A DNA stretch of 64,000 nucleotides from Adineta vaga (GCA_021613535.1 CP075492.1:11036001-11100000), one strand, 5' to 3'; positions 12,203 to 31,600 are shown, counted from the stretch's first letter. The notes: generated by a model from the sequence alone, not told the origin. Made by a program: numbers and translations.

Positions 12203-15200
12203 TCAAAACTGACTCCAATTATGTCCATAAATCAATGTATTGCTGACTTCCATATTTCGGGATATATCTTCGGGTATCGAATGTCCTAACCAACGTCGAT
12301 GTAATGTACGATATCGTTCTTCACATAAATGTAATGGATTTCCACGTCTAAAAAAAACAAAAGAAAAATAAATATTTTGTTATCATCAATATTCGAATTG
12401 AAAAATTGTTTCCTAACCGTAAATTTTGATCGGTTTCACCATAATCATCTAAATATGGCGCTGCCAAAAGTGTTCCACGTGTTTTATTACTTCGTCCATA
12501 ATTATTTATATTCAATAAAAGTAATGAACATTCTTTAACACGTAAATAAAGTCCATTTGTACCACAACATTGTTGTGTATGAAGATTACATGGACCACCT
12601 GTATGATCAATATTAAAAAATGATGAAATAATGCCATTGGTTGAGAGAGGACTTGGTGTACTCGTTGATGATGATCGAACAACGACTTCACCACAAACTA
12701 AACATATACATGGTGAACGTATTTCATCACGTGCATATTTATATGGTGCAACACTAAATAAGTTTGTTTTTTAATGAGAAAATCAATTGATTTCTTTATT
12801 TTTTATTTTATTTTATTTTACCCTTGTGAAACTTGATTCATAAGATCAATATATTCTTTTGGTAAAGAATACAATTCATTGATGGCTATTGGATATTTCA
12901 CTAGTGATTTATTAGTAGATAGATTTGAAATCCAATTATTGATCAAATCATTCAAACATCGTTCGTTATCTGTATCTAATAATTCAGACAAACATGTCGG
13001 CAAACCAAGATATCGACAAATAGCCGAATATTCATCTAAATCTATTAAGAAAACTGATAAAATAATTAGATAAATTTCGATTTTTATAAAACCTGTTTCA
13101 ATTGGCCACGAAGTTCCTGTCAAATGATGATAGAAAAGTGCTGAACAACGAAGTAATGGAAGTACTGATTGTTTAAGTTTATCGCAAATAATTTCAAGTG
13201 ACAACATTTGATTGGATGACGATGCCGATCTACAACTCAACATATGAATTTCAGAACGTTTTTTTCAAAATTATCCTACGTTTGATTTTTAGTAATTTTT
13301 TCTATCAATTTTTGAATAGCTTTTATTTCGACATTATCATTAGTCTTCGTATCAGTCTTCATTTGTTGTTGTGATACATCATCTTTTTTTACGAGAGAAT
13401 AGAAAATGATATTTTGTTTTCAAATAAAATCTTACTATTTTCAAATAGAAAGCCTTCACTGGAAAGAATTTGTATGCAATGTGCCATGAAAATCAATCTC
13501 ATCAAATACAAATCATTGAGATTTCCAGTTGGAACATGTGTTAACGATGGTGAGATTTCTTTCGATGCAAATAGAATTGGTAGAGTAAAACAAATTGAAA
13601 TCAACAAATGAAATAGATCAATATCAGCTAATGATGGAATTTGAATATTTGTTCGTGAGAAAAGAAGTACTAGAAGAAAAGAATTGATTTGTTTTTTTAT
13701 CAAACAATTTCCCAACTAACCTGATAATAATTTCAAACAATGTTTACGAATTTTCTCACTATCATTTAATAAACCGTAAACTGCAGCAACTTTCGTTAAA
13801 CAATTAATCAATTCACTTTGTCGAATTGATAATTGTGAAAAGATTGATTTGGAATCAATACGCAACACTTGTTCTATAGATTGAATTGTATATGCACATG
13901 CTGTCCATATTATTAATGGAACACGATCGTTATCATCATCGGGATCAACATTTAATCCATACTGAAATTAATTAAGAAAAAAAATATTTAGATTATAGAA
14001 AGAAAAGAAAAAAATAACTAACCGCATAAACATTTTTACCAAAATTTAATAAACGTTCACGAATACCATCGGAAAAATCTTGAACTCTACAAAAAAAAAA
14101 CTCAGTATAAAAAAACAGAATTGTTAGAAGAAGAAAATGTTTGATTACCTTGAATCGCCAGCAAAACCGAATAATAATTGAAAATTTTGTGCAGCACGTT
14201 CAGCCATCATTTTTGTAATTGATGTTAATGGACATGGATTAAAAAATAATTGTTCTTCATGTGTTTCAATCTCATAACGAGATTCAATACTACCATTCAA
14301 GGCTTTTTCTAAACCATCTAACCATTCACTAAATGTCATCTGAGCTAGTTTTCTTTCAGGTGCAAATGTACGTAGTGATGGTAAAACTGGTATAGTCGTA
14401 TTACTTAAAGTTTGACATAATGGACAAAGAAATTCATTACGATCAGTATCATAATTTGCTGAACCACGTATTCGTAAAGTTCGACGATGATCTTGAGATG
14501 TAATAGAATTATGATATCTAGAGAAAGAGAGAGAGAGAGAAATCATATAAACTTCTTATGTTTCTCTTTGTTTTAATTTACTTTGTCCAACATGAAGCAT
14601 GAATAGCATGACCACATGATGAAACATGTACACCCCAATGAAGATCAGTAGACATAAAAGTTGGATCGAATGCATCCCAATTTTCAATTCGTCGTGATCG
14701 ATTTTTCGATAAAACTCTCGAACTATAAAACAAATGTATACATTGAACAAAACAAGACACAATTCAATTCGATACACTCACTTTTGTACATATGCTGGTA
14801 ATACAATTGCGTCTGCATTCAATTTCACTTCACTATTTTCTTGACAGAAAATACATATTAATGATTGTTTACTGGATTGTGATACATCAGTATCATATGT
14901 TCCTAAACATGATTGTATAACAGGAGATGTCTCATCAATAATCATGGGTTCAAATTTCGATGTTGTATTGGGTGATGTCGATAGAATTTGAAGATCAGAT
15001 GATGATTGTTCATCCATACTTTCCGAACACAAATGAATGTTTTTTTCAATGAAATTTTTCTGTAATTCAGTCATCTGTGCAATCATTTTTGCACGTTTTT
15101 GTACTGCTAGATCTTTTCGTTTACGATGTGCACGTTTGTTTACATCGTCCGCTTCTTGATGAGTAGTAATCATCGATGATGAATTCATTTGTTCATTACT

Positions 15201-18200
15201 TTGATCGAATTTTTTATAGTGCTTGAAGAAATAAAACAAAGATTCGATGGAAGAATGAAATATGTATATACAAACTTTATTCGTGTGATTAAGTAATTCT
15301 CTACAAATTTCAGCTTTACTTGGTAGTTTAAGATGTAATTGAGTAAATAAATTATCAAATTCAAATTTTTGACATTTAGAATAGAATTCAAAATTCGGTT
15401 CACGTTCTTGTTCATAAAGTGCTAAAGTTAATAAATGTAATGCCTATATAGTAGAGTATATTCGAGATTTGCTTTTTCTTTTGCAAAATTTTGTTTTTAT
15501 TTACGCGATTAAGAATAGTTTCAGACCAAAATAAAGCTTTTGGATCTGTAGGTCGATAAAGGCAACCCTTGAGTAATGTTAGAAATATATCACTATCAAG
15601 AAGATGAATTATTGGATGAAATGCATCGGTAAATAGTGGTGGACAAGGAATAAGTAAGGTTACTGGACTTCCATCATTATTTAACTTTCGACGTTTGATT
15701 ATATATTCTTCAGACTAAAAGAATAATGTATTCGATTTAGTATGAAAACTTAAAGACAATTTCTTACTTTGCATTGTTCAGCTTTTGTATAATGATAATA
15801 GAATTGATTGTATTCCATTAATCGATCTGTTTTTAACTCATAATTTCCTTTTGTTGCAGTACCTCGTCTACAAAATCTAGATGTCATTAATCTGGAACGA
15901 TTGTCTTTACTTACTTAAAATCTGCCACTTCTTTCAAAACACTTTCTAAATCTCCTAATCCCTATAATACAAACATTAGTTATAGATCTACGAATTAATA
16001 CGTGTAAAACGAACTGTTTCTAATTGTCCACAATCTTGTAAACCTCGAATTAATTCTGAATGTGCCATTGGTGAAATACATAGTTGATGTATAACTTCTC
16101 GTGTTAATTTTTGTTCATTTGTTACTCTTCCAACACTGGGTTCATATCGTTCGTTGATAATGATTATTAGAAGATGAAGAAATTCTTCCATTACACGAAC
16201 TTTTTCTTTTACTCTCGATTCTGCATCAGGTAGATGACCATTTTCTGGAGTTCTACAATTTTATTAATAGATGTCAAAACGAATTCTTGTTAAAAAAAAA
16301 CAAGAGATTCTTACCGAACCCAATCTAATAAACTAAATTTATGTAGAAGTTGAATTAAAAATGTATCAGCTGGTGTAAATGAAGCACCAACTTGTAAGGC
16401 AAGTATATCTCGATCATACATTTCTTTTCGACATTTTACATTGGAATAGTAATGAATCTTTAAGATGAAAAATATGAAAAACTTTTCTAGTTCAAAACAA
16501 TCTTCTTTTTACTTGATTTGATAAAGAATGGCCATTTCGTTTCCATAGACCTGCTTCATGTTGAGCAGTGAGTACTTGGATACGTAAAGATTCTTCATAG
16601 ACAAAACATGGATGAATTTGATATTTTTCACACTAAAATTTCACACGAACAAATTCGTATTGAATTTAACAAAGAATTTTCAATAGCTGCTCACTAGATT
16701 GTTAAATTTTGTCACCGTATCAGTATATTTTTGTAGATGAACATGTAGAGCTAAAGAGAAGAAAAGATATCTAAACTAATCATATTCGATTATTTATTGA
16801 AATCCTACCAGCAAATAATCGAACAACTGGTATATGAACTGTAATTGGATCTTTAGCCACATCGTATGCAAAACAATCAACTTTAAGATTACGTACAGTT
16901 GTTTTAACAATTGATGCATTGATTGTTTTATCTTTGATTAAATGAGATACATCACTTGTTTTTTCTACTTCTGCTAACACTGAACCGGTAACTTCATAAG
17001 CACGATTTAATAACTCTGCCTATGAAAATAAATGAAGAAGAAGAAGAAGAAGATCTTTCGATTGAATTCATTTGTTTTCATTTACATCATGAGAACACCA
17101 ATCTAATATCGATGCGATAATTGCTTGAATTTTAATGACTAAATTGAAGGCTGTTTCCCATTCGGGATCGAATTCAATATGTTGTCCAACTTGTCGTGTT
17201 ACTTTATCCATACCCTTGATAGAAATACATTTTTAGAAAGAAAAATAATACGAAGAATCGATTATTTACATGCATGTATTTTAATAATTGAAGAAATGAT
17301 TGAAGACCATTGATAAAATTTTCGCGAAGTTCAGGCGTATATTGATCAGGAACAACACCTAGCAGATATCTAAACAAATACAAAGAAAAATGATTTTTCG
17401 ATCTTAATGATAAAGCTTCTTCTCAATACGTAGAACGATCGTTTTAGTTAAAGAAAAGAATACCTTAAGTCGTAAAGAATAGATTGTGCACGTCGAAATT
17501 CATGTTGTACTGCTGTATTTGTTGTTCTTGAAAAAACAAGTCTATCATGATCAAGTTTTGATTGACAATATTTAAGAAAAGAATCTATTATTATTTGAAA
17601 TGCATTATGTGAAGATATTAAATATCTTGCCTAAAGAAAAGATGATTTTGAATTGAAATAAGAAACAAAAAATAATCATATCATTTAAAGCATGTTGTAA
17701 ACATAAGACGTTTTCTTACAAGACTTTGAGTCGCTAATATTTGCACCGACAACTTCAAAAAACAATCAGTACGAGAAATAACAGAAGAATCATCACGATA
17801 TTGTTGAACAATATTCGAATAACACTATAAATTATATGATTAGAAACAAATTTTGCGAGTACTACTACCGACGAGGAAAAACGAAAATTCTTATATTTAC
17901 AACGTGCTTAGATTTTCAATGGAAGGAAAAAAAAAGATTTACCAAAGTTGGTACAGTGTAGATTTGAACAGAGAGATCAGTAAATGAAACGTATTCGTCG
18001 GGATCTTTGACAAAATTTAGCCAAACTGTCGAATAATTCTAAATCATTGATAAGATTTTTATTTTGAACATCGTTTTTCCTCGTCGGATAGAGAGTCATT
18101 ACGCAATATGAGTAGCATTTAAAAGTAATCTAATCTATCTATACGATAGGTCTTTTTTTTTACCAGCTGTGTTTACATACGATTTTGTTATTTTTATCAA

Positions 18201-19813
18201 GGCATTCAATAACTACATAGCTTAGATTAGTAAAAAGAGAAAATATTTTATACTGAAATGCTGTTTTCTTTCCTTTCTCTGTTCACAATTCCTTTTTTGC
18301 TACTCATATTGCGTATTGTAATCATCTCCATTGTTCTTACTTTCATGTACAGAATTGCAAATGTTTTTTTCCATTCAGCATCCATAAAAAAACTAAACAA
18401 TAAATCAAATAATTCTAAATCAAACATTTGATTGTCTTCTTACCTATTAATAAATATTTGATGTAATGCTGATCTTGCACTTTTCCAAACCATTTTTTCA
18501 CCTAGTAAAACTTTTTCTGTCAAAACTATATTTTGTTGATCATCACGTTCCATTTCGCATTCACAAAATAATCGTCGAAAACCATCTGATATGCTGATTA
18601 TATCTTGAAGATAACTTAGAAGTTTTTGTGCAAAATATTGTAATGAAATGAATGAACTCGGATAGATTTCACATTTCAATGGATTATCAGCTGTACGTAT
18701 ACGAATTGTTTGTTGTGCTTCACGACACTGTTCAACTGTACCAATTCGAATCACTGTTCGACCTTCACGATCGACTAACGATGCAAATTCATGTCCTTCT
18801 TGTTTCGTACATTGAATAGCACGACTTAAAACATTAATTACTTGATCATATGTATGAACTTCATCATTGAATAACATTGTTACATATCGTTTATGATCTC
18901 CATCCCAAAATCTAAACGGAAACTTTCATGATAATATCAAAATGAAATAATTCATACTCATTTTTTAATTCATTTGGTATTTCTTGATATTTTTCTGTGA
19001 AAAGTAATTTAATTATAAAACAAAGTAAGATGTGAAATAATTGTTTAGCACGTTGACGAAGATCAACTGGTAAACGATTGAGTATTTCTTCAGATGATTC
19101 ATTTGAATCATCACGTGGTAAATGTAAACTGCAATGTACATGTTGTTTCCAAGCTTCACTATCTCCACAATCACAATATCCTCCACCAGCGGAAACATTC
19201 ATCTAAATCAATGAATTTATCACGTTCTCTTTCGAAATCATTAGACGAAAAGATATTTTCATACTTTATATCGATGATTTCGATGTTCACTTTGAAGAAA
19301 ACAATCCGTACATAGAACACATGTAGGATCAATACAACAATCTCGACAAAAATAAGTTGGTTCTTCAGCTTTAAATAAATGTCCACAAACAGTTGATTGT
19401 TTATTAAATGAACGAATTTTTTCTATTGCTTCATCCGTATTCAATGTTCCGTATAAATAAATATCCAATGGTCGAAAAAGAATTTCTTGTGTACGTTGTT
19501 CAATGATACCTTTTATTAATTGTGTATGATAAACATAACATTGAGGTACAAATGTTTTCCAATGTTCAAATAAGATTTTTTCAAGATCAGTCTTTTGAAG
19601 TAATTCTTCGCCAAATTTATTTCCATCGAAATTAATTAGTTCATCCGATAGTGGTGGTAAATCAATATTTGTTGTGATAGTTGGTAAATTACTATTACTG
19701 TCATCTTCAGCTAAAACCATATTGATAGCATCTTGAATATTGGCAGGATTTATTTCAATATCAAGCATAAATTCATCCGTATCCGATAAATCAATGGAAT
19801 CAGCATCATCCAT
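12203..19813 (-). CDS. UBR1: N-end rule E3 ubiquitin ligase UBR1/UBR2 (UBR box, ClpS-like domain, RING-H2, UBR C-terminal domain); multi-exon
   Basis: UBR box CGHLFKAEEPTYFCRDCCIDPTCVLC...GGGYCDCGDSEAWK; ClpS-like LFNDEVHTYDQVI; RING pieces CIFCQE...HVSSCGHAIHASCW...EFLCPLCQTLSN; C-terminal APYLDDYGETD...RGNPLHLC...HNWSQF*. Confidence 0.95.
17720..17824 (-). other. Alternative (duplicated) UBR1 exon B, 105 nt, phase 0-0
   Basis: tatag| CYSNIVQQYRDDSSVISRTDCFLKLSVQILATQSL |gtaag. Open frame, paralogous to exon A (shared YS...F..LSVQI.....L). Confidence 0.75.
17943..18038 (-). other. UBR1 exon A, 96 nt, phase 0-0 (canonical-type copy)
   Basis: ttag| NYSTVWLNFVKDPDEYVSFTDLSVQIYTVPTL |gtaaa. 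Matches the conserved UBR1/2 LSVQ(M/I)FTVPTL motif. Confidence 0.9.
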
Positions 19814-20607: not shown

Positions 20608-21677
<1,070 letters not shown>

Positions 21678-28600: not shown

Positions 28601-31600
28601 CATTGGTTTTCTTTTGTATTGCTTCAAGTAACAATTTATATCGTGTTAATCGTTGTAAAGGTTTGATTGTTAAATCCGAAAATGATAAACGATTCGTATA
28701 GTTACTTTCAATCCACTAAAAAAAGCCCAGAACAAAATCAATGGTTTTATTTTGAAAAATGAAAAACATTTCTCTTTCTTCTCTTACAGAAATTAAACTT
28801 TGAAATAATTCATCACGAGAAAGTTTTTGTTTAAAATATTCTGCACTGGTTTTTTGATCAAGTACATAATGTAAATATGGTTTAAAATATACATCGAACT
28901 AAAATAAGATTCAATTAAATCAATATGAAAACAATACAAAGAATGTTTTACATTAAGAAATCCATTTTTTAAATCAGATGGATTCATTGGTAGACCATGT
29001 TGTTTAAGTTTAACTTTAATTGGTAATAAAATTTCTTTCCAAAAGAGTAAATTTCCATGAAGTACTTCTTGTATATTGGAAAATAATTTCTCCATATCGA
29101 TATCATTGAAAATGCCTTCACGCTGAGATGATTTCAATATACTAACACTGGTCATAAGTATATCAGTCATGGTTAGAATTTGACGTATATACGAAACTTC
29201 AGTTGTAAGTAATTCATAGATAGCTTCTTGTTGAAGTTTTGTTGTTTCAGACATGAGCTGAAAAATAAAAAAAGGAAGTTAGTATTTAGTAGTTGATCAT
29301 TTTGCACTGTCCTTAATCTATAGTATCATGACCTCTCTTGTAAAATTATCCTGTAAGAAGAGAGATCGTTCTTGACTTAGTTATTCCAAAGAAAATAAAG
29401 ATTATGTAACATAGGCAAACGTATCCTTTAAACCTTGCACTATTATGAAGGATAGAAAAGATCTCTATCTTTCTTTTTTCTTTCGAAAATAATTCAAATA
29501 ATATTTACTGTTCGTGCTTGTTCAGTCAAATATGGTTGCCATTCTTTTTCAATCACTAAATCACATTCATCAGTTGAACATTGTAGTTGAGCTAATTTTG
29601 GTAGACCATGTATTAACCATTCTTCACATTTTCGACGAACGAATGAAAGATTACTTTCGGAACGTTCTGTTGAATCAGATGTATCCTATGAAAAAAATTT
29701 ATTCAATAATTTATTTTTCTTTTCATATTAAATAAGACTTACTCGTGTAAATATACTTCCGGTAAATATACTTGATCGATTAGTTTTATTCATTCGAGTT
29801 GATGATTTAGCATCTGAATTGTCATCGTTGTCTAACATCATACAATGTGTTGATAAACGTTTGGATGTCGTTTTCGAATTCTGAAAAGTAAAGAGAAAAC
29901 AACTGTGTGGTCGATTTATGTTATGCACTGACGAGGATTTGTTTTTCACGATACTGAAAATCGAGAAATAACAATAATAGAATGAAGAGAAAAAGTGTTG
30001 TTCGAAGCTTCTAACTATCGGAAAGCAACCTATTGCAAATGAAGCTAATCTTCGAAACTTGAGATATATGAAAATAAAACAGACAAGAAACCTAAATATG
30101 TTTGTTGACAGTAAGCAATAAGATTTTCCTCGCGGTCTCTCTTTCTGCTTAACGTCGATTATCGAAAGTATCCATTAAGATGAAAATCGAGACGAGACAT
30201 GGCTTTATTGCGTTTTTTTCTTCTATGTCTATACGCCATGATGAGAAGGTCACATTTTTTGTTTAGTATTATAAATGATAAAAGAATAAGAACACTAATA
30301 ATATGATATCAATCATTTCTTTCATTTAAGATACTTTTCTATTCTTTTCCTTGATTCTGACGATGATAAACAGGTGAATAGTATCTTTGCTGTTAACCTA
30401 TTAACGACTGACAAGTGTTTATCTGCTATTTTTCGGCAACATCGTGATATATATGTCTACAGAGACTAATTGATTCCAACCACTTACTGATGGTAATACA
30501 GCTGAACCAGTGGAATTTCTTTTTTCTTTTCGTTCTTTTCCAGCTGATGTTTTAGCCAATGCTGGATTGATGGATTCTAAATTAAAGAATAAAACGAAAT
30601 TGAAATTTTCTTCAATTAAATTTAAAAACAAAACTAGAAGACCATTTTCGATTGATTTGTTTTCTAGGATATCATGTATCGATGAAAGATATGCTACATC
30701 AGTATAACTAATACTTTTTTGTTTAATAAAGCAAGGATTATCGAATTGTTCGATTATTGGTGAATCATCTTCAGTTAAGGTACAATTCCAAACAAATTTC
30801 GATGTCGATGAATGAGAATCTGTATACGATTTTCGTTTCGATTTCCAAACATCGGATAGTTGTCGACAAATCGATGAACGACGACCTAGCTCTCCATCAG
30901 TCATTTTTTTACGGTATGGAGAGTAAGCTGTAAGATTTCTTTGTACAATGAATGAAAGAAGCAATAAACGCTAATCGAAGGAGAGAGAATTATGTAATAA
31001 GACGTATGCAGGACAATAACAACAAAAAACTGATAAGTAAGTTTTCTTTTTTTTTCTCTCTCTCTCCCTCTCGCTTTGCCTTAAATAGACTTTTCTATGC
31101 ATGATTGCTAAAAAACGAGCAAGTTTCTAATCAACTGATCGAATCACAGGATAAGTTCGGTTTTTTTTCTCTAATTTAACTTGCTAACTAATTTCAACTT
31201 TGGACAAGAACAGCAGTGATGAAATATCAAGATTAGCCGTTCTATTACATCATTGTATATATATATATATAGACATTTCAAGAATGTATGCCAAGTGAGT
31301 TTTTATATGAGTATGTGCGTGAAAGGAACGAGAAGAGAGGGAGGGAGAGAGAGAGAAAAAAAAGGTTTTATCGTTAATTAGGACAGAAAGACGAGATGAC
31401 ATAATCAATCGAATGGTTTCATGCTTGAGTTTTTTCTTTCTCTCTATACCTGTAACAACAAGATCATTTAAAAGAAGATGTTTTACTGGTTGATCCAAGG
31501 ACAATTGTAATGTAGGAGCACTTCGTAAACAAATATAATATTTTTCAATGGAAAGATGATGTTTTTCAAAGAGTTTTATTAACATTTCTCTACAAAACAA

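What the first reader, a model, noticed from the sequence alone, without database searches (positions are those of the whole stretch)
17688..18087. Interlocking intronic RNA duplexes that could switch between two UBR1 exons
Seen: in transcript order (minus strand) the elements are X (18087-18071), exon A, Y (17909-17889), X' (17884-17868), exon B, Y' (17708-17688). X/X' is a perfect 17-bp inverted repeat (+ strand tcgtttttcctcgtcgg / ccgacgaggaaaaacga) that brackets exon A. Y/Y' (tcttatatttacaacgtgctt / aagcatgttgtaaacataaga) is a 21-nt duplex with one mismatch and one G-U wobble that works in the minus-strand RNA, and it brackets exon B. The two stems cross, and Y and X' are only 4 nt apart. 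Established: competing or bidirectional RNA pairing controls mutually exclusive exons in arthropod Dscam1, 14-3-3 and Mhc. Inference: the two stems are structurally incompatible, so each pre-mRNA loops out exactly one exon. I know of no such switch described for an N-end-rule E3 or for this lineage.
Basis: partly seen in the sequence, partly recalled or inferred. Interest (0 to 1): 0.85.

Follow-up and report, generated by a model that had tools for sequence, protein, structure and literature searches.

The report
RNA stems steering rotifer UBR exons
In the rotifer Adineta vaga, a UBR1/UBR2-type protein-degradation gene holds two alternative copies of one exon, flanked by crossing pairs of matching intron sequences that bdelloid rotifers have conserved; these probably choose which copy enters the mRNA, as shown by mutation in a fruit-fly gene.

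Summary
X/X' is a perfect 17-bp inverted repeat. Y/Y' is a 21-bp duplex with one mismatch and one wobble. They cross exactly as described, around two homologous in-frame exons (96 and 105 nt) of the Adineta vaga UBR2-like gene.

The repeats are neither chance nor transposon remnants. All five other bdelloid lineages checked that have exon B carry both stems at the same places, in introns that otherwise do not align. A sixth carries X, Y and X' before its contig ends. Y/Y' has four to six compensatory pairs. Three lineages with exon A only have no stems and short introns on at least the upstream side.

Exon B is under purifying selection. A transcript-like contig from a two-exon lineage carries A only.

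The layout matches the dual docking-site pairing proven by mutagenesis in Drosophila serpent, so this is a new member of a known kind, in a new phylum and gene.

Not shown: any RNA with exon B, strict mutual exclusion, or that the stems cannot coexist as a pseudoknot.

An unchecked note from this scan reports a similar interleaved pairing in the NTE gene of the same genome.

The parts
12206..19813 (-). UBR1/UBR2-type N-recognin gene of Adineta vaga (28 exons in the annotated exon-A form)
   Evidence: Database protein P0195, named Adineta vaga I4U23_014282, maps exactly onto the window. Its precomputed Pfam domains are zf-UBR, ClpS, WHD_UBR1 and PF18995. The best solved relative is human UBR2, E 4e-91.
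18341..18394 (-). Constitutive exon upstream of the cluster; its donor site follows at 18340
   Evidence: Exact protein-to-genome mapping; sequence read.
18298..18318 (-). 5' arm of a third stem in the intron upstream of exon A
   Evidence: 21 nt, 95% complementary to 18097-18117, with 18 perfect pairs; -29.2 kcal/mol. Part of the minimum-energy fold. Conserved in L006, L017 and L004.
18097..18117 (-). 3' arm of the third stem; ends 9 nt before X
   Evidence: Same calls as the 5' arm. The stem is present in all four lineages whose upstream intron is 178-558 nt and absent in the three where it is 66-101 nt.
18071..18087 (-). X, upstream arm of stem 1; it ends 32 nt before the acceptor of exon A
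   Evidence: Perfect 17-bp complement of X'. A 14-nt core is invariant in seven loci except for one position. RNAalifold predicts the helix.
17943..18038 (-). Exon A, 96 nt, the canonical version of the segment
   Evidence: Translation. Protein identity across bdelloids is 81-97% and dN/dS is 0.03-0.06. It aligns to UBR2 residues about 397-429.
17889..17909 (-). Y, upstream arm of stem 2; it starts 34 nt after the donor of exon A
   Evidence: Conserved, with compensatory changes against Y'.
17868..17884 (-). X', downstream arm of stem 1; it ends 43 nt before the acceptor of exon B
   Evidence: It is the most conserved block of the middle intron, more conserved than exon B itself.
17720..17824 (-). 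Exon B, 105 nt, a divergent duplicate of exon A
   Evidence: Translation. The reading frame is kept in L006, L009, L010, L011 and L017. dN/dS is 0.10-0.40, similar to the constitutive exon downstream.
17688..17708 (-). Y', downstream arm of stem 2; it starts 12 nt after the donor of exon B
17460..17630 (-). Constitutive exon downstream of the cluster
   Evidence: Exact protein-to-genome mapping.

Best explanation
The window is Adineta vaga, and the gene is its single UBR2-like N-recognin. One 32-codon exon, just after the ClpS-like domain, was duplicated in tandem.

Four conserved intronic elements form two inter-intron RNA helices. X-X' encloses exon A, and Y-Y' encloses exon B.

By analogy with Drosophila serpent, X-X' folds exon A away and brings the upstream donor close to the acceptor of exon B, which selects B. 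Y-Y' folds exon B away and brings the donor of exon A close to the downstream acceptor, which selects A. Because the helices cross, forming one should hinder the other.

A third stem closes the expanded part of the upstream intron.

The likely common logic is intron length. This gene's other 25 introns are 46-94 nt. Each stem reduces a 280-814-nt splice distance to about 67-127 nt of unfolded RNA.

Shown here: the elements, their complementarity, their conservation and covariation, their link to exon B, and the coding constraint on B. Inferred: the direction of each effect, the mutual hindrance, and the length logic.
For: - Repeats confirmed and far beyond chance; not repeat-family DNA.
- Both stems are present at the same relative places in WIN, L006, L009/L010, L011, L017 and L004. 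L016 has X, Y and X' before its contig ends. These loci include Adineta and a well-supported Rotaria clade.
- The arms are islands of identity in introns that are otherwise unalignable, while synonymous divergence between the same lineages is 0.4-1.0.
- RNAalifold recovers both helices on its own. Y-Y' has 4 of 18 pairs with compensatory changes and X-X' has 1 of 17. My own pair tables give 6 in the proximal and 3 in the distal part of Y-Y'.
- Loci with exon A only (L005, L014, D. carnosus L021) have none of the motifs. Their flanking introns are 53-87 nt, apart from one 364-nt intron in L021.
- Intron lengths and effective lengths.
- The X state and the Y state are the two best folds, and which one is lower differs between lineages.
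- P0172, a 1856-residue protein on a 5758-nt contig, must come from spliced RNA. It belongs to the L011 lineage, whose DNA has both exons, and it carries A without B.
- The same layout was validated by disruptive and compensatory mutations in serpent (PMC4691838).
Against: - No RNA with exon B was found, and no read-level data were available.
- Both exons keep the reading frame. NCBI gene models of other bdelloids show A+B, A only, B only and neither, so exclusivity is unproven.
- X-X' is almost invariant, so it offers little covariation.
- In A. vaga, X-X' is the stronger helix and is transcribed first, which on the serpent logic should favour B. Yet the annotated and transcript-like forms carry A.
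- The arms do not overlap, so a pseudoknot holding both helices is not excluded.
- The backbone of the lineage tree is unresolved, so loss of exon B cannot be told from never having gained it.
Confidence: 0.7

Rival explanations
1. The stems only bridge introns. They help the spliceosome remove unusually long introns, and Y-Y' keeps a rarely used or decaying exon B silent. There is no regulated choice between A and B.
For: The only transcript-like evidence is A-only. The third stem clearly looks like a pure bridge. Exon B evolves several-fold faster than A.
Against: X-X' would have no purpose in a gene that always uses A, because it encloses A, yet it is the best conserved element. Exon B keeps its frame and a dN/dS of 0.10-0.40 across lineages with near-saturated synonymous sites.
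Confidence: 0.15
2. The inverted repeats flanking each exon drive back-splicing, producing small circular RNAs of exon A or exon B. They do not select the linear isoform.
For: Flanking intronic complementarity is the standard promoter of exon circularisation (my own knowledge, not tested here). Each stem brackets one exon together with both of its splice sites.
Against: The single exons are 96 and 105 nt, which is very small for circles. This idea does not explain why the stems occur only with the duplicated exon, why they cross, or why exon B stays coding.
Confidence: 0.05
3. The conserved blocks are binding sites for proteins, or DNA-level elements, and their complementarity is incidental.
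For: X and X' are conserved as sequences, not only as pairs.
Against: Y/Y' changes on both sides while keeping the pairing at four to six positions. Three separate pairs of blocks are each reverse complements of one another.
Confidence: 0.04
4. The repeats are chance matches or remnants of a transposon with terminal inverted repeats.
For: The genome is AT-rich, and each pair has a spacer of about 170-190 nt.
Against: Random windows gave no repeat of 17 nt or more. Each arm has only its two copies in the genome. The arms are conserved in orthologues with unrelated loop sequences. Terminal repeats of one element cannot interleave.
Confidence: 0.01

Closest known systems
Drosophila serpent (srp) exons 4.1/4.2: bidirectional or dual docking-site RNA pairing (Yue et al. 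2016, PMC4691838)
   Same: Both have two tandem alternative exons and four conserved intronic elements: one upstream, two between the exons and one downstream. These form two inter-intron helices that could also make a long-range pseudoknot. In srp, the upstream pairing selects the distal exon and the downstream pairing selects the proximal exon.
   Different: The phylum (Rotifera, not Arthropoda) and the gene differ. Nothing has been tested by mutation here. This locus has an added third stem that closes the upstream intron. Introns here are of the roughly 60-nt class, so the length logic may matter more.
Dscam1 exon 6, 14-3-3xi and Mhc: a single docking site competing for many selector sequences
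   Same: Long-range intronic base pairing decides which member of an exon cluster is used.
   Different: In those genes the selectors compete for one shared docking sequence, so exclusion follows from overlap. Here X' and Y are separate and non-overlapping, 4 nt apart in A. vaga, and each has its own partner.
Mammalian ATE1 exons 7a/7b: competing RNA structures (Kalinina et al., PMC7797038)
   Same: This is a mutually exclusive exon pair in the same Arg/N-degron pathway, controlled by conserved intronic complementary elements.
   Different: In ATE1, two elements compete for a third, and there is also a 30-kb helix. It is an arginyltransferase, not the E3 ligase.
Mammalian UBR2 alternative exon pair
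   Same: Exactly the homologous exon is substituted. Myotis myotis UBR2 isoforms X9 and X2 differ only there and at one C-terminal gap. A CHO-cell study describes two similar 33-residue Ubr2 exons used exclusively (bioRxiv 10.1101/863175).
   Different: I found no RNA-structure mechanism reported for it. The echinoderm UBR2-like isoform pairs I compared (Antedon, Patiria) do not differ at this exon, so the duplication is probably independent of the bdelloid one. That inference was not tested by a tree.
Yeast intron self-complementarity that shortens the donor to branch-point distance or hides an in-loop exon (Howe and Ares 1997, as cited in PMC4691838)
   Same: The third stem, and the looping-out effect of X-X' and Y-Y', would work in the same way.
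   Different: Known to me only from the citation and from memory; not compared here.

Membership tests
Mutually exclusive exon cluster run by bidirectional (dual docking-site) RNA pairing, srp type | Two tandem, homologous alternative exons between constitutive exons | tested here: met
   Exons A and B share the same ends and core motif and lie between exons mapped exactly by P0195.
Mutually exclusive exon cluster run by bidirectional (dual docking-site) RNA pairing, srp type | Four conserved intronic elements: one upstream, two between the exons, one downstream | tested here: met
   X, Y, X' and Y' are conserved blocks in six two-exon lineages.
Mutually exclusive exon cluster run by bidirectional (dual docking-site) RNA pairing, srp type | The elements form two inter-intron helices, upstream with middle and middle with downstream | tested here: met
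   Repeat finder, duplex energies and RNAalifold consensus structures.
Mutually exclusive exon cluster run by bidirectional (dual docking-site) RNA pairing, srp type | The pairing is maintained in evolution by compensatory change | tested here: met
   Y-Y' has 4 compensatory pairs by RNAalifold, and 6 proximal plus 3 distal in my own tables. X-X' has 1, plus two wobble-preserving changes.
Mutually exclusive exon cluster run by bidirectional (dual docking-site) RNA pairing, srp type | Only one of the two exons appears in each mRNA | tested here: inconclusive
   An A-only spliced contig exists in a two-exon lineage (P0172). No B-containing RNA was found. The reading frame allows both exons or neither.
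Mutually exclusive exon cluster run by bidirectional (dual docking-site) RNA pairing, srp type | Disruptive mutations shift exon choice and compensatory mutations restore it | not testable with these tools
   Needs minigene or in vivo mutagenesis.
Single docking-site and selector competition, Dscam1 exon 6 type | Alternative helices use one shared docking sequence, so they exclude each other by overlap | tested here: not met
   X' (17868-17884) and Y (17889-17909) do not overlap, and each pairs with its own partner.
UBR1/UBR2 N-recognin E3 ligases | UBR box, ClpS-like N-domain and UBR1 winged-helix domain in one protein of about 1800 residues | tested here: met
   Precomputed Pfam domains for P0195 are PF02207, PF02617, PF22960 and PF18995. 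Residues 260-620 match solved UBR2 and UBR1 at E 4e-91 and 2e-71.

The most novel reading that the evidence does not exclude
Bdelloid rotifers splice introns of about 60 nt. They may have evolved, independently of arthropods, a general design for alternative exon clusters. In this design, interlocked intronic helices fold away whichever exon is not used, so that every splicing event sees an intron of ordinary length. Extra bridging stems would absorb later intron growth. The UBR2-like cluster would then be one instance of a genome-wide rule. The scan's unchecked note on the NTE gene of the same genome hints at a second instance.
Probability: 0.3. Interest if true: 0.7.

Novelty: new member of a known kind. 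Interest (0 to 1): 0.55.

Why it matters
RNA-structure control of mutually exclusive exons has been demonstrated mainly in arthropod genes and a few vertebrate genes. A deeply conserved, covarying example in a rotifer extends it to another animal phylum.

This case also offers natural controls. Some lineages have lost or never had exon B, and they lack every stem. In others the upstream intron has grown, and a bridging stem has been kept or gained with it.

The case suggests a testable idea: in short-intron genomes, such stems work by restoring a normal effective intron length.

The same exon of the same ligase is also alternatively substituted in mammalian UBR2. This marks the segment after the ClpS-like domain as a repeatedly tuned part of the N-degron reader.

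Tried and rejected
- **Transposon origin of the arms.** Rejected by genome-wide pattern counts.
- **Search for B-containing transcript fragments.** A 231-residue piece of P0195 returned only genomic exon fragments and partial gene models.
- **NCBI gene models of other bdelloids.** They show all four exon combinations. I treat them as predictions, not as RNA evidence.
- **L013/L020.** The gene breaks off inside the third stem's loop, so the locus gave nothing for the alignment.
- **D. carnosus.** A weak exon-B-like stretch in the 364-nt intron has no splice sites. I do not count it as an exon.
- **Strand from wobble pairs.** Wobbles and A.C mismatches are about equally frequent, so they do not tell which strand folds.
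- **The count of structure pairs.** Not used, because it needs a long typed structure string. Pair tables were computed in scripts, and RNAalifold was used instead.
- It was rerun with the peptide taken from the window by reference.
- **Joined exon models.** Only for the tree were the translations of two exons per locus concatenated inside a script.
- **Human contigs.** None was met.

Full report
**What is in the window.** The minus strand of 12206-19813 encodes a UBR1/UBR2-type N-recognin. The database protein P0195, named Adineta vaga I4U23_014282, contains the window's exons exactly, so the window is Adineta vaga. The assembly has 100.8 Mb in six pieces, and the gene is single-copy in it. 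The closest solved relative of residues 260-620 is human UBR2.

**The two exons.** The constitutive exon ending at 18341 is followed by two exons that both open with a tyrosine-serine motif and share the 'LSVQI' core near their ends. Exon A is 18038-17943 (96 nt) and exon B is 17824-17720 (105 nt). The next constitutive exon starts at 17630. The annotated protein uses A only.

**Checking the observation.** The repeat finder gives X/X' as a perfect 17-nt inverted repeat. It gives Y/Y' as 26 nt at 85% complementarity, with a 21-nt core. Duplex energies are -28.9 and -23.7 kcal/mol.
- It also returns a third pair, 18298-18318 with 18097-18117, which has 18 perfect pairs. This pair lies wholly inside the intron upstream of exon A and ends 9 nt before X.
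- In the whole 64-kb window, these are the only two long perfect inverted repeats that are not low-complexity.
- Random windows of the same dinucleotide make-up gave none of 17 nt or more.
- Each arm occurs only twice in the genome.
- The minimum-energy fold of the region contains the third stem and X-X', and has a z-score of -3.3.

**Orthologues.** A search with the 145-residue ClpS-domain exon found fragments from many bdelloid rotifers in genomes, metagenomes and read assemblies. I fetched their contigs.
- Six lineages have both exons: A. vaga, L006, L009/L010, L011, L017 and L004. L017 falls in a well-supported Rotaria clade next to R. socialis. L004 is a degenerate Rotaria sordida copy.
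- L016 ends just after exon A but already shows X, Y and X'.
- In every one of these lineages, X lies 16-33 nt before the acceptor of exon A and X' lies 43-73 nt before the acceptor of exon B. Y follows the donor of exon A by 27-44 nt, and Y' follows the donor of exon B by about 10-35 nt.
- Outside these blocks and the splice signals the introns do not align. X' is better conserved than the coding sequence of exon B.
- Synonymous divergence between the same lineages is 0.4-1.0 per site, so neutral sequence would not have stayed identical.

**Covariation.** RNAalifold was given only the sequences.
- It predicts Y-Y' with 18 pairs, four of them keeping the pair after changes on both sides. One position runs U-A, U.G, C-G across lineages.
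- It predicts X-X' with 17 pairs. One terminal pair covaries, and two internal changes are wobble-preserving.
- My own pair tables agree and add three compensatory positions in the distal part of Y-Y'.
- The third stem has one clear compensatory pair.

**Natural controls.** Three loci have exon A only: L005, L014 and Didymodactylos carnosus L021. None has an X, Y or third-stem motif. Their flanking introns are 53-87 nt, except for one 364-nt intron in D. carnosus that holds a doubtful relic of B. The tree backbone is unresolved, so I cannot say whether these lineages lost exon B or never had it.

**The third stem and intron length.** The third stem is present in all four lineages whose upstream intron is 178-558 nt, and absent in the three where it is 66-101 nt. 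After subtracting the hairpin, the remainder is 66-101 nt everywhere.

**Exon B is a real coding exon.** It keeps an open frame of 93 or 105 nt in five independent lineages, with dN/dS of 0.10-0.40. That is similar to the constitutive exon downstream; exon A is at 0.03-0.06.

**RNA-level evidence is thin.** P0172 is a 1856-residue protein on a 5758-nt contig, so it must derive from spliced RNA. It matches the L011 lineage exactly and carries A without B. A second such contig, P0202, belongs to an exon-A-only clade.

**Mechanism.** The layout is that of Drosophila serpent. There, four conserved intronic elements form an upstream and a downstream pairing. Mutagenesis with compensatory rescue showed that the upstream pairing selects the distal exon and the downstream pairing selects the proximal one. 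The in-loop exon is suppressed, and a long-range pseudoknot was discussed but judged unlikely to be the active form (PMC4691838).
- I therefore propose that X-X' selects B and Y-Y' selects A.
- One observation specific to this genome fits that proposal. The other 25 introns of the gene are 46-94 nt, with a median of 59 across all 27 introns of the annotated form. The upstream-to-B and A-to-downstream distances are 280-814 and 300-371 nt. With the stems formed they shrink to 70-127 and 67-99 nt.
- X sits where the branch point and U2 anchoring site of exon A should be, so pairing and spliceosome assembly may compete there. That would reconcile the stronger, first-transcribed X-X' helix with A as the form seen.
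- These last steps are inference.

**Comparison and novelty.** I file this as a new member of the bidirectional-pairing kind, not of the single docking-site kind, because X' and Y do not overlap.
- I found no paper on such structures in rotifers or in UBR genes.
- ATE1, in the same pathway, uses competing structures.
- Mammalian UBR2 substitutes exactly the homologous exon.
- An unchecked note from this scan reports interleaved pairings in the NTE gene of this genome.

Noticed in passing
L012:573-1117: A metagenome contig of the L011 lineage lacks the DNA from the middle of exon A to 14 nt before the acceptor of exon B. The break lies between two short direct repeats and removes Y and X'. This could be a deletion allele that can only make the B form, or an assembly artefact.
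   Followed up: partly
L020:10497-20438 (same contig as L013): In this lineage the gene stops after the upstream exon and the 5' arm of the third stem. No exon A, exon B or later exon appears in the next 10 kb. This could be a large insertion, a rearrangement or a misassembly.
   Followed up: partly
L004:1539-2962: This Rotaria sordida 5.4-kb contig is a degenerate second copy. It has a stop and a deletion in the ClpS-domain exon and one extra T in exon B, yet all three stems are nearly intact. The intact R. sordida protein P0201 has both exons in frame.
   Followed up: partly
P0003 versus P0231 (Myotis myotis UBR2 isoforms X9 and X2): The two isoforms differ by substitution of exactly the exon homologous to A/B here, so the same exon has been duplicated and used alternatively in mammals.
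   Followed up: partly
P0006 versus P0232 (Antedon mediterranea), P0010 versus P0234 (Patiria miniata): Echinoderm UBR2-like isoforms of equal length differ in a 16-residue block near residue 781-796. The sea-star pair differs by 4 residues at the same place. This may be another alternative segment of the ligase.
   Followed up: no
window 17996-18002 and alignment A2 columns 98-102 / 200-204: Exon A contains a 7-nt copy of the start of X. RNAalifold also proposes a 5-bp pairing between that part of exon A and the core of Y. This is probably incidental, because the exon sequence is constrained by coding.
   Followed up: no
window 31048-31070 and 31341-31363: A 23-nt perfect inverted repeat of low-complexity T/C-rich sequence, with arms about 270 nt apart.
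   Followed up: no
window 20946-21529 (+) and loci L006, L007, L015, L016, L020, L021: A Ras-family GTPase gene lies upstream of the UBR gene in the window and in every bdelloid contig long enough to show it, so the gene order is conserved.
   Followed up: no
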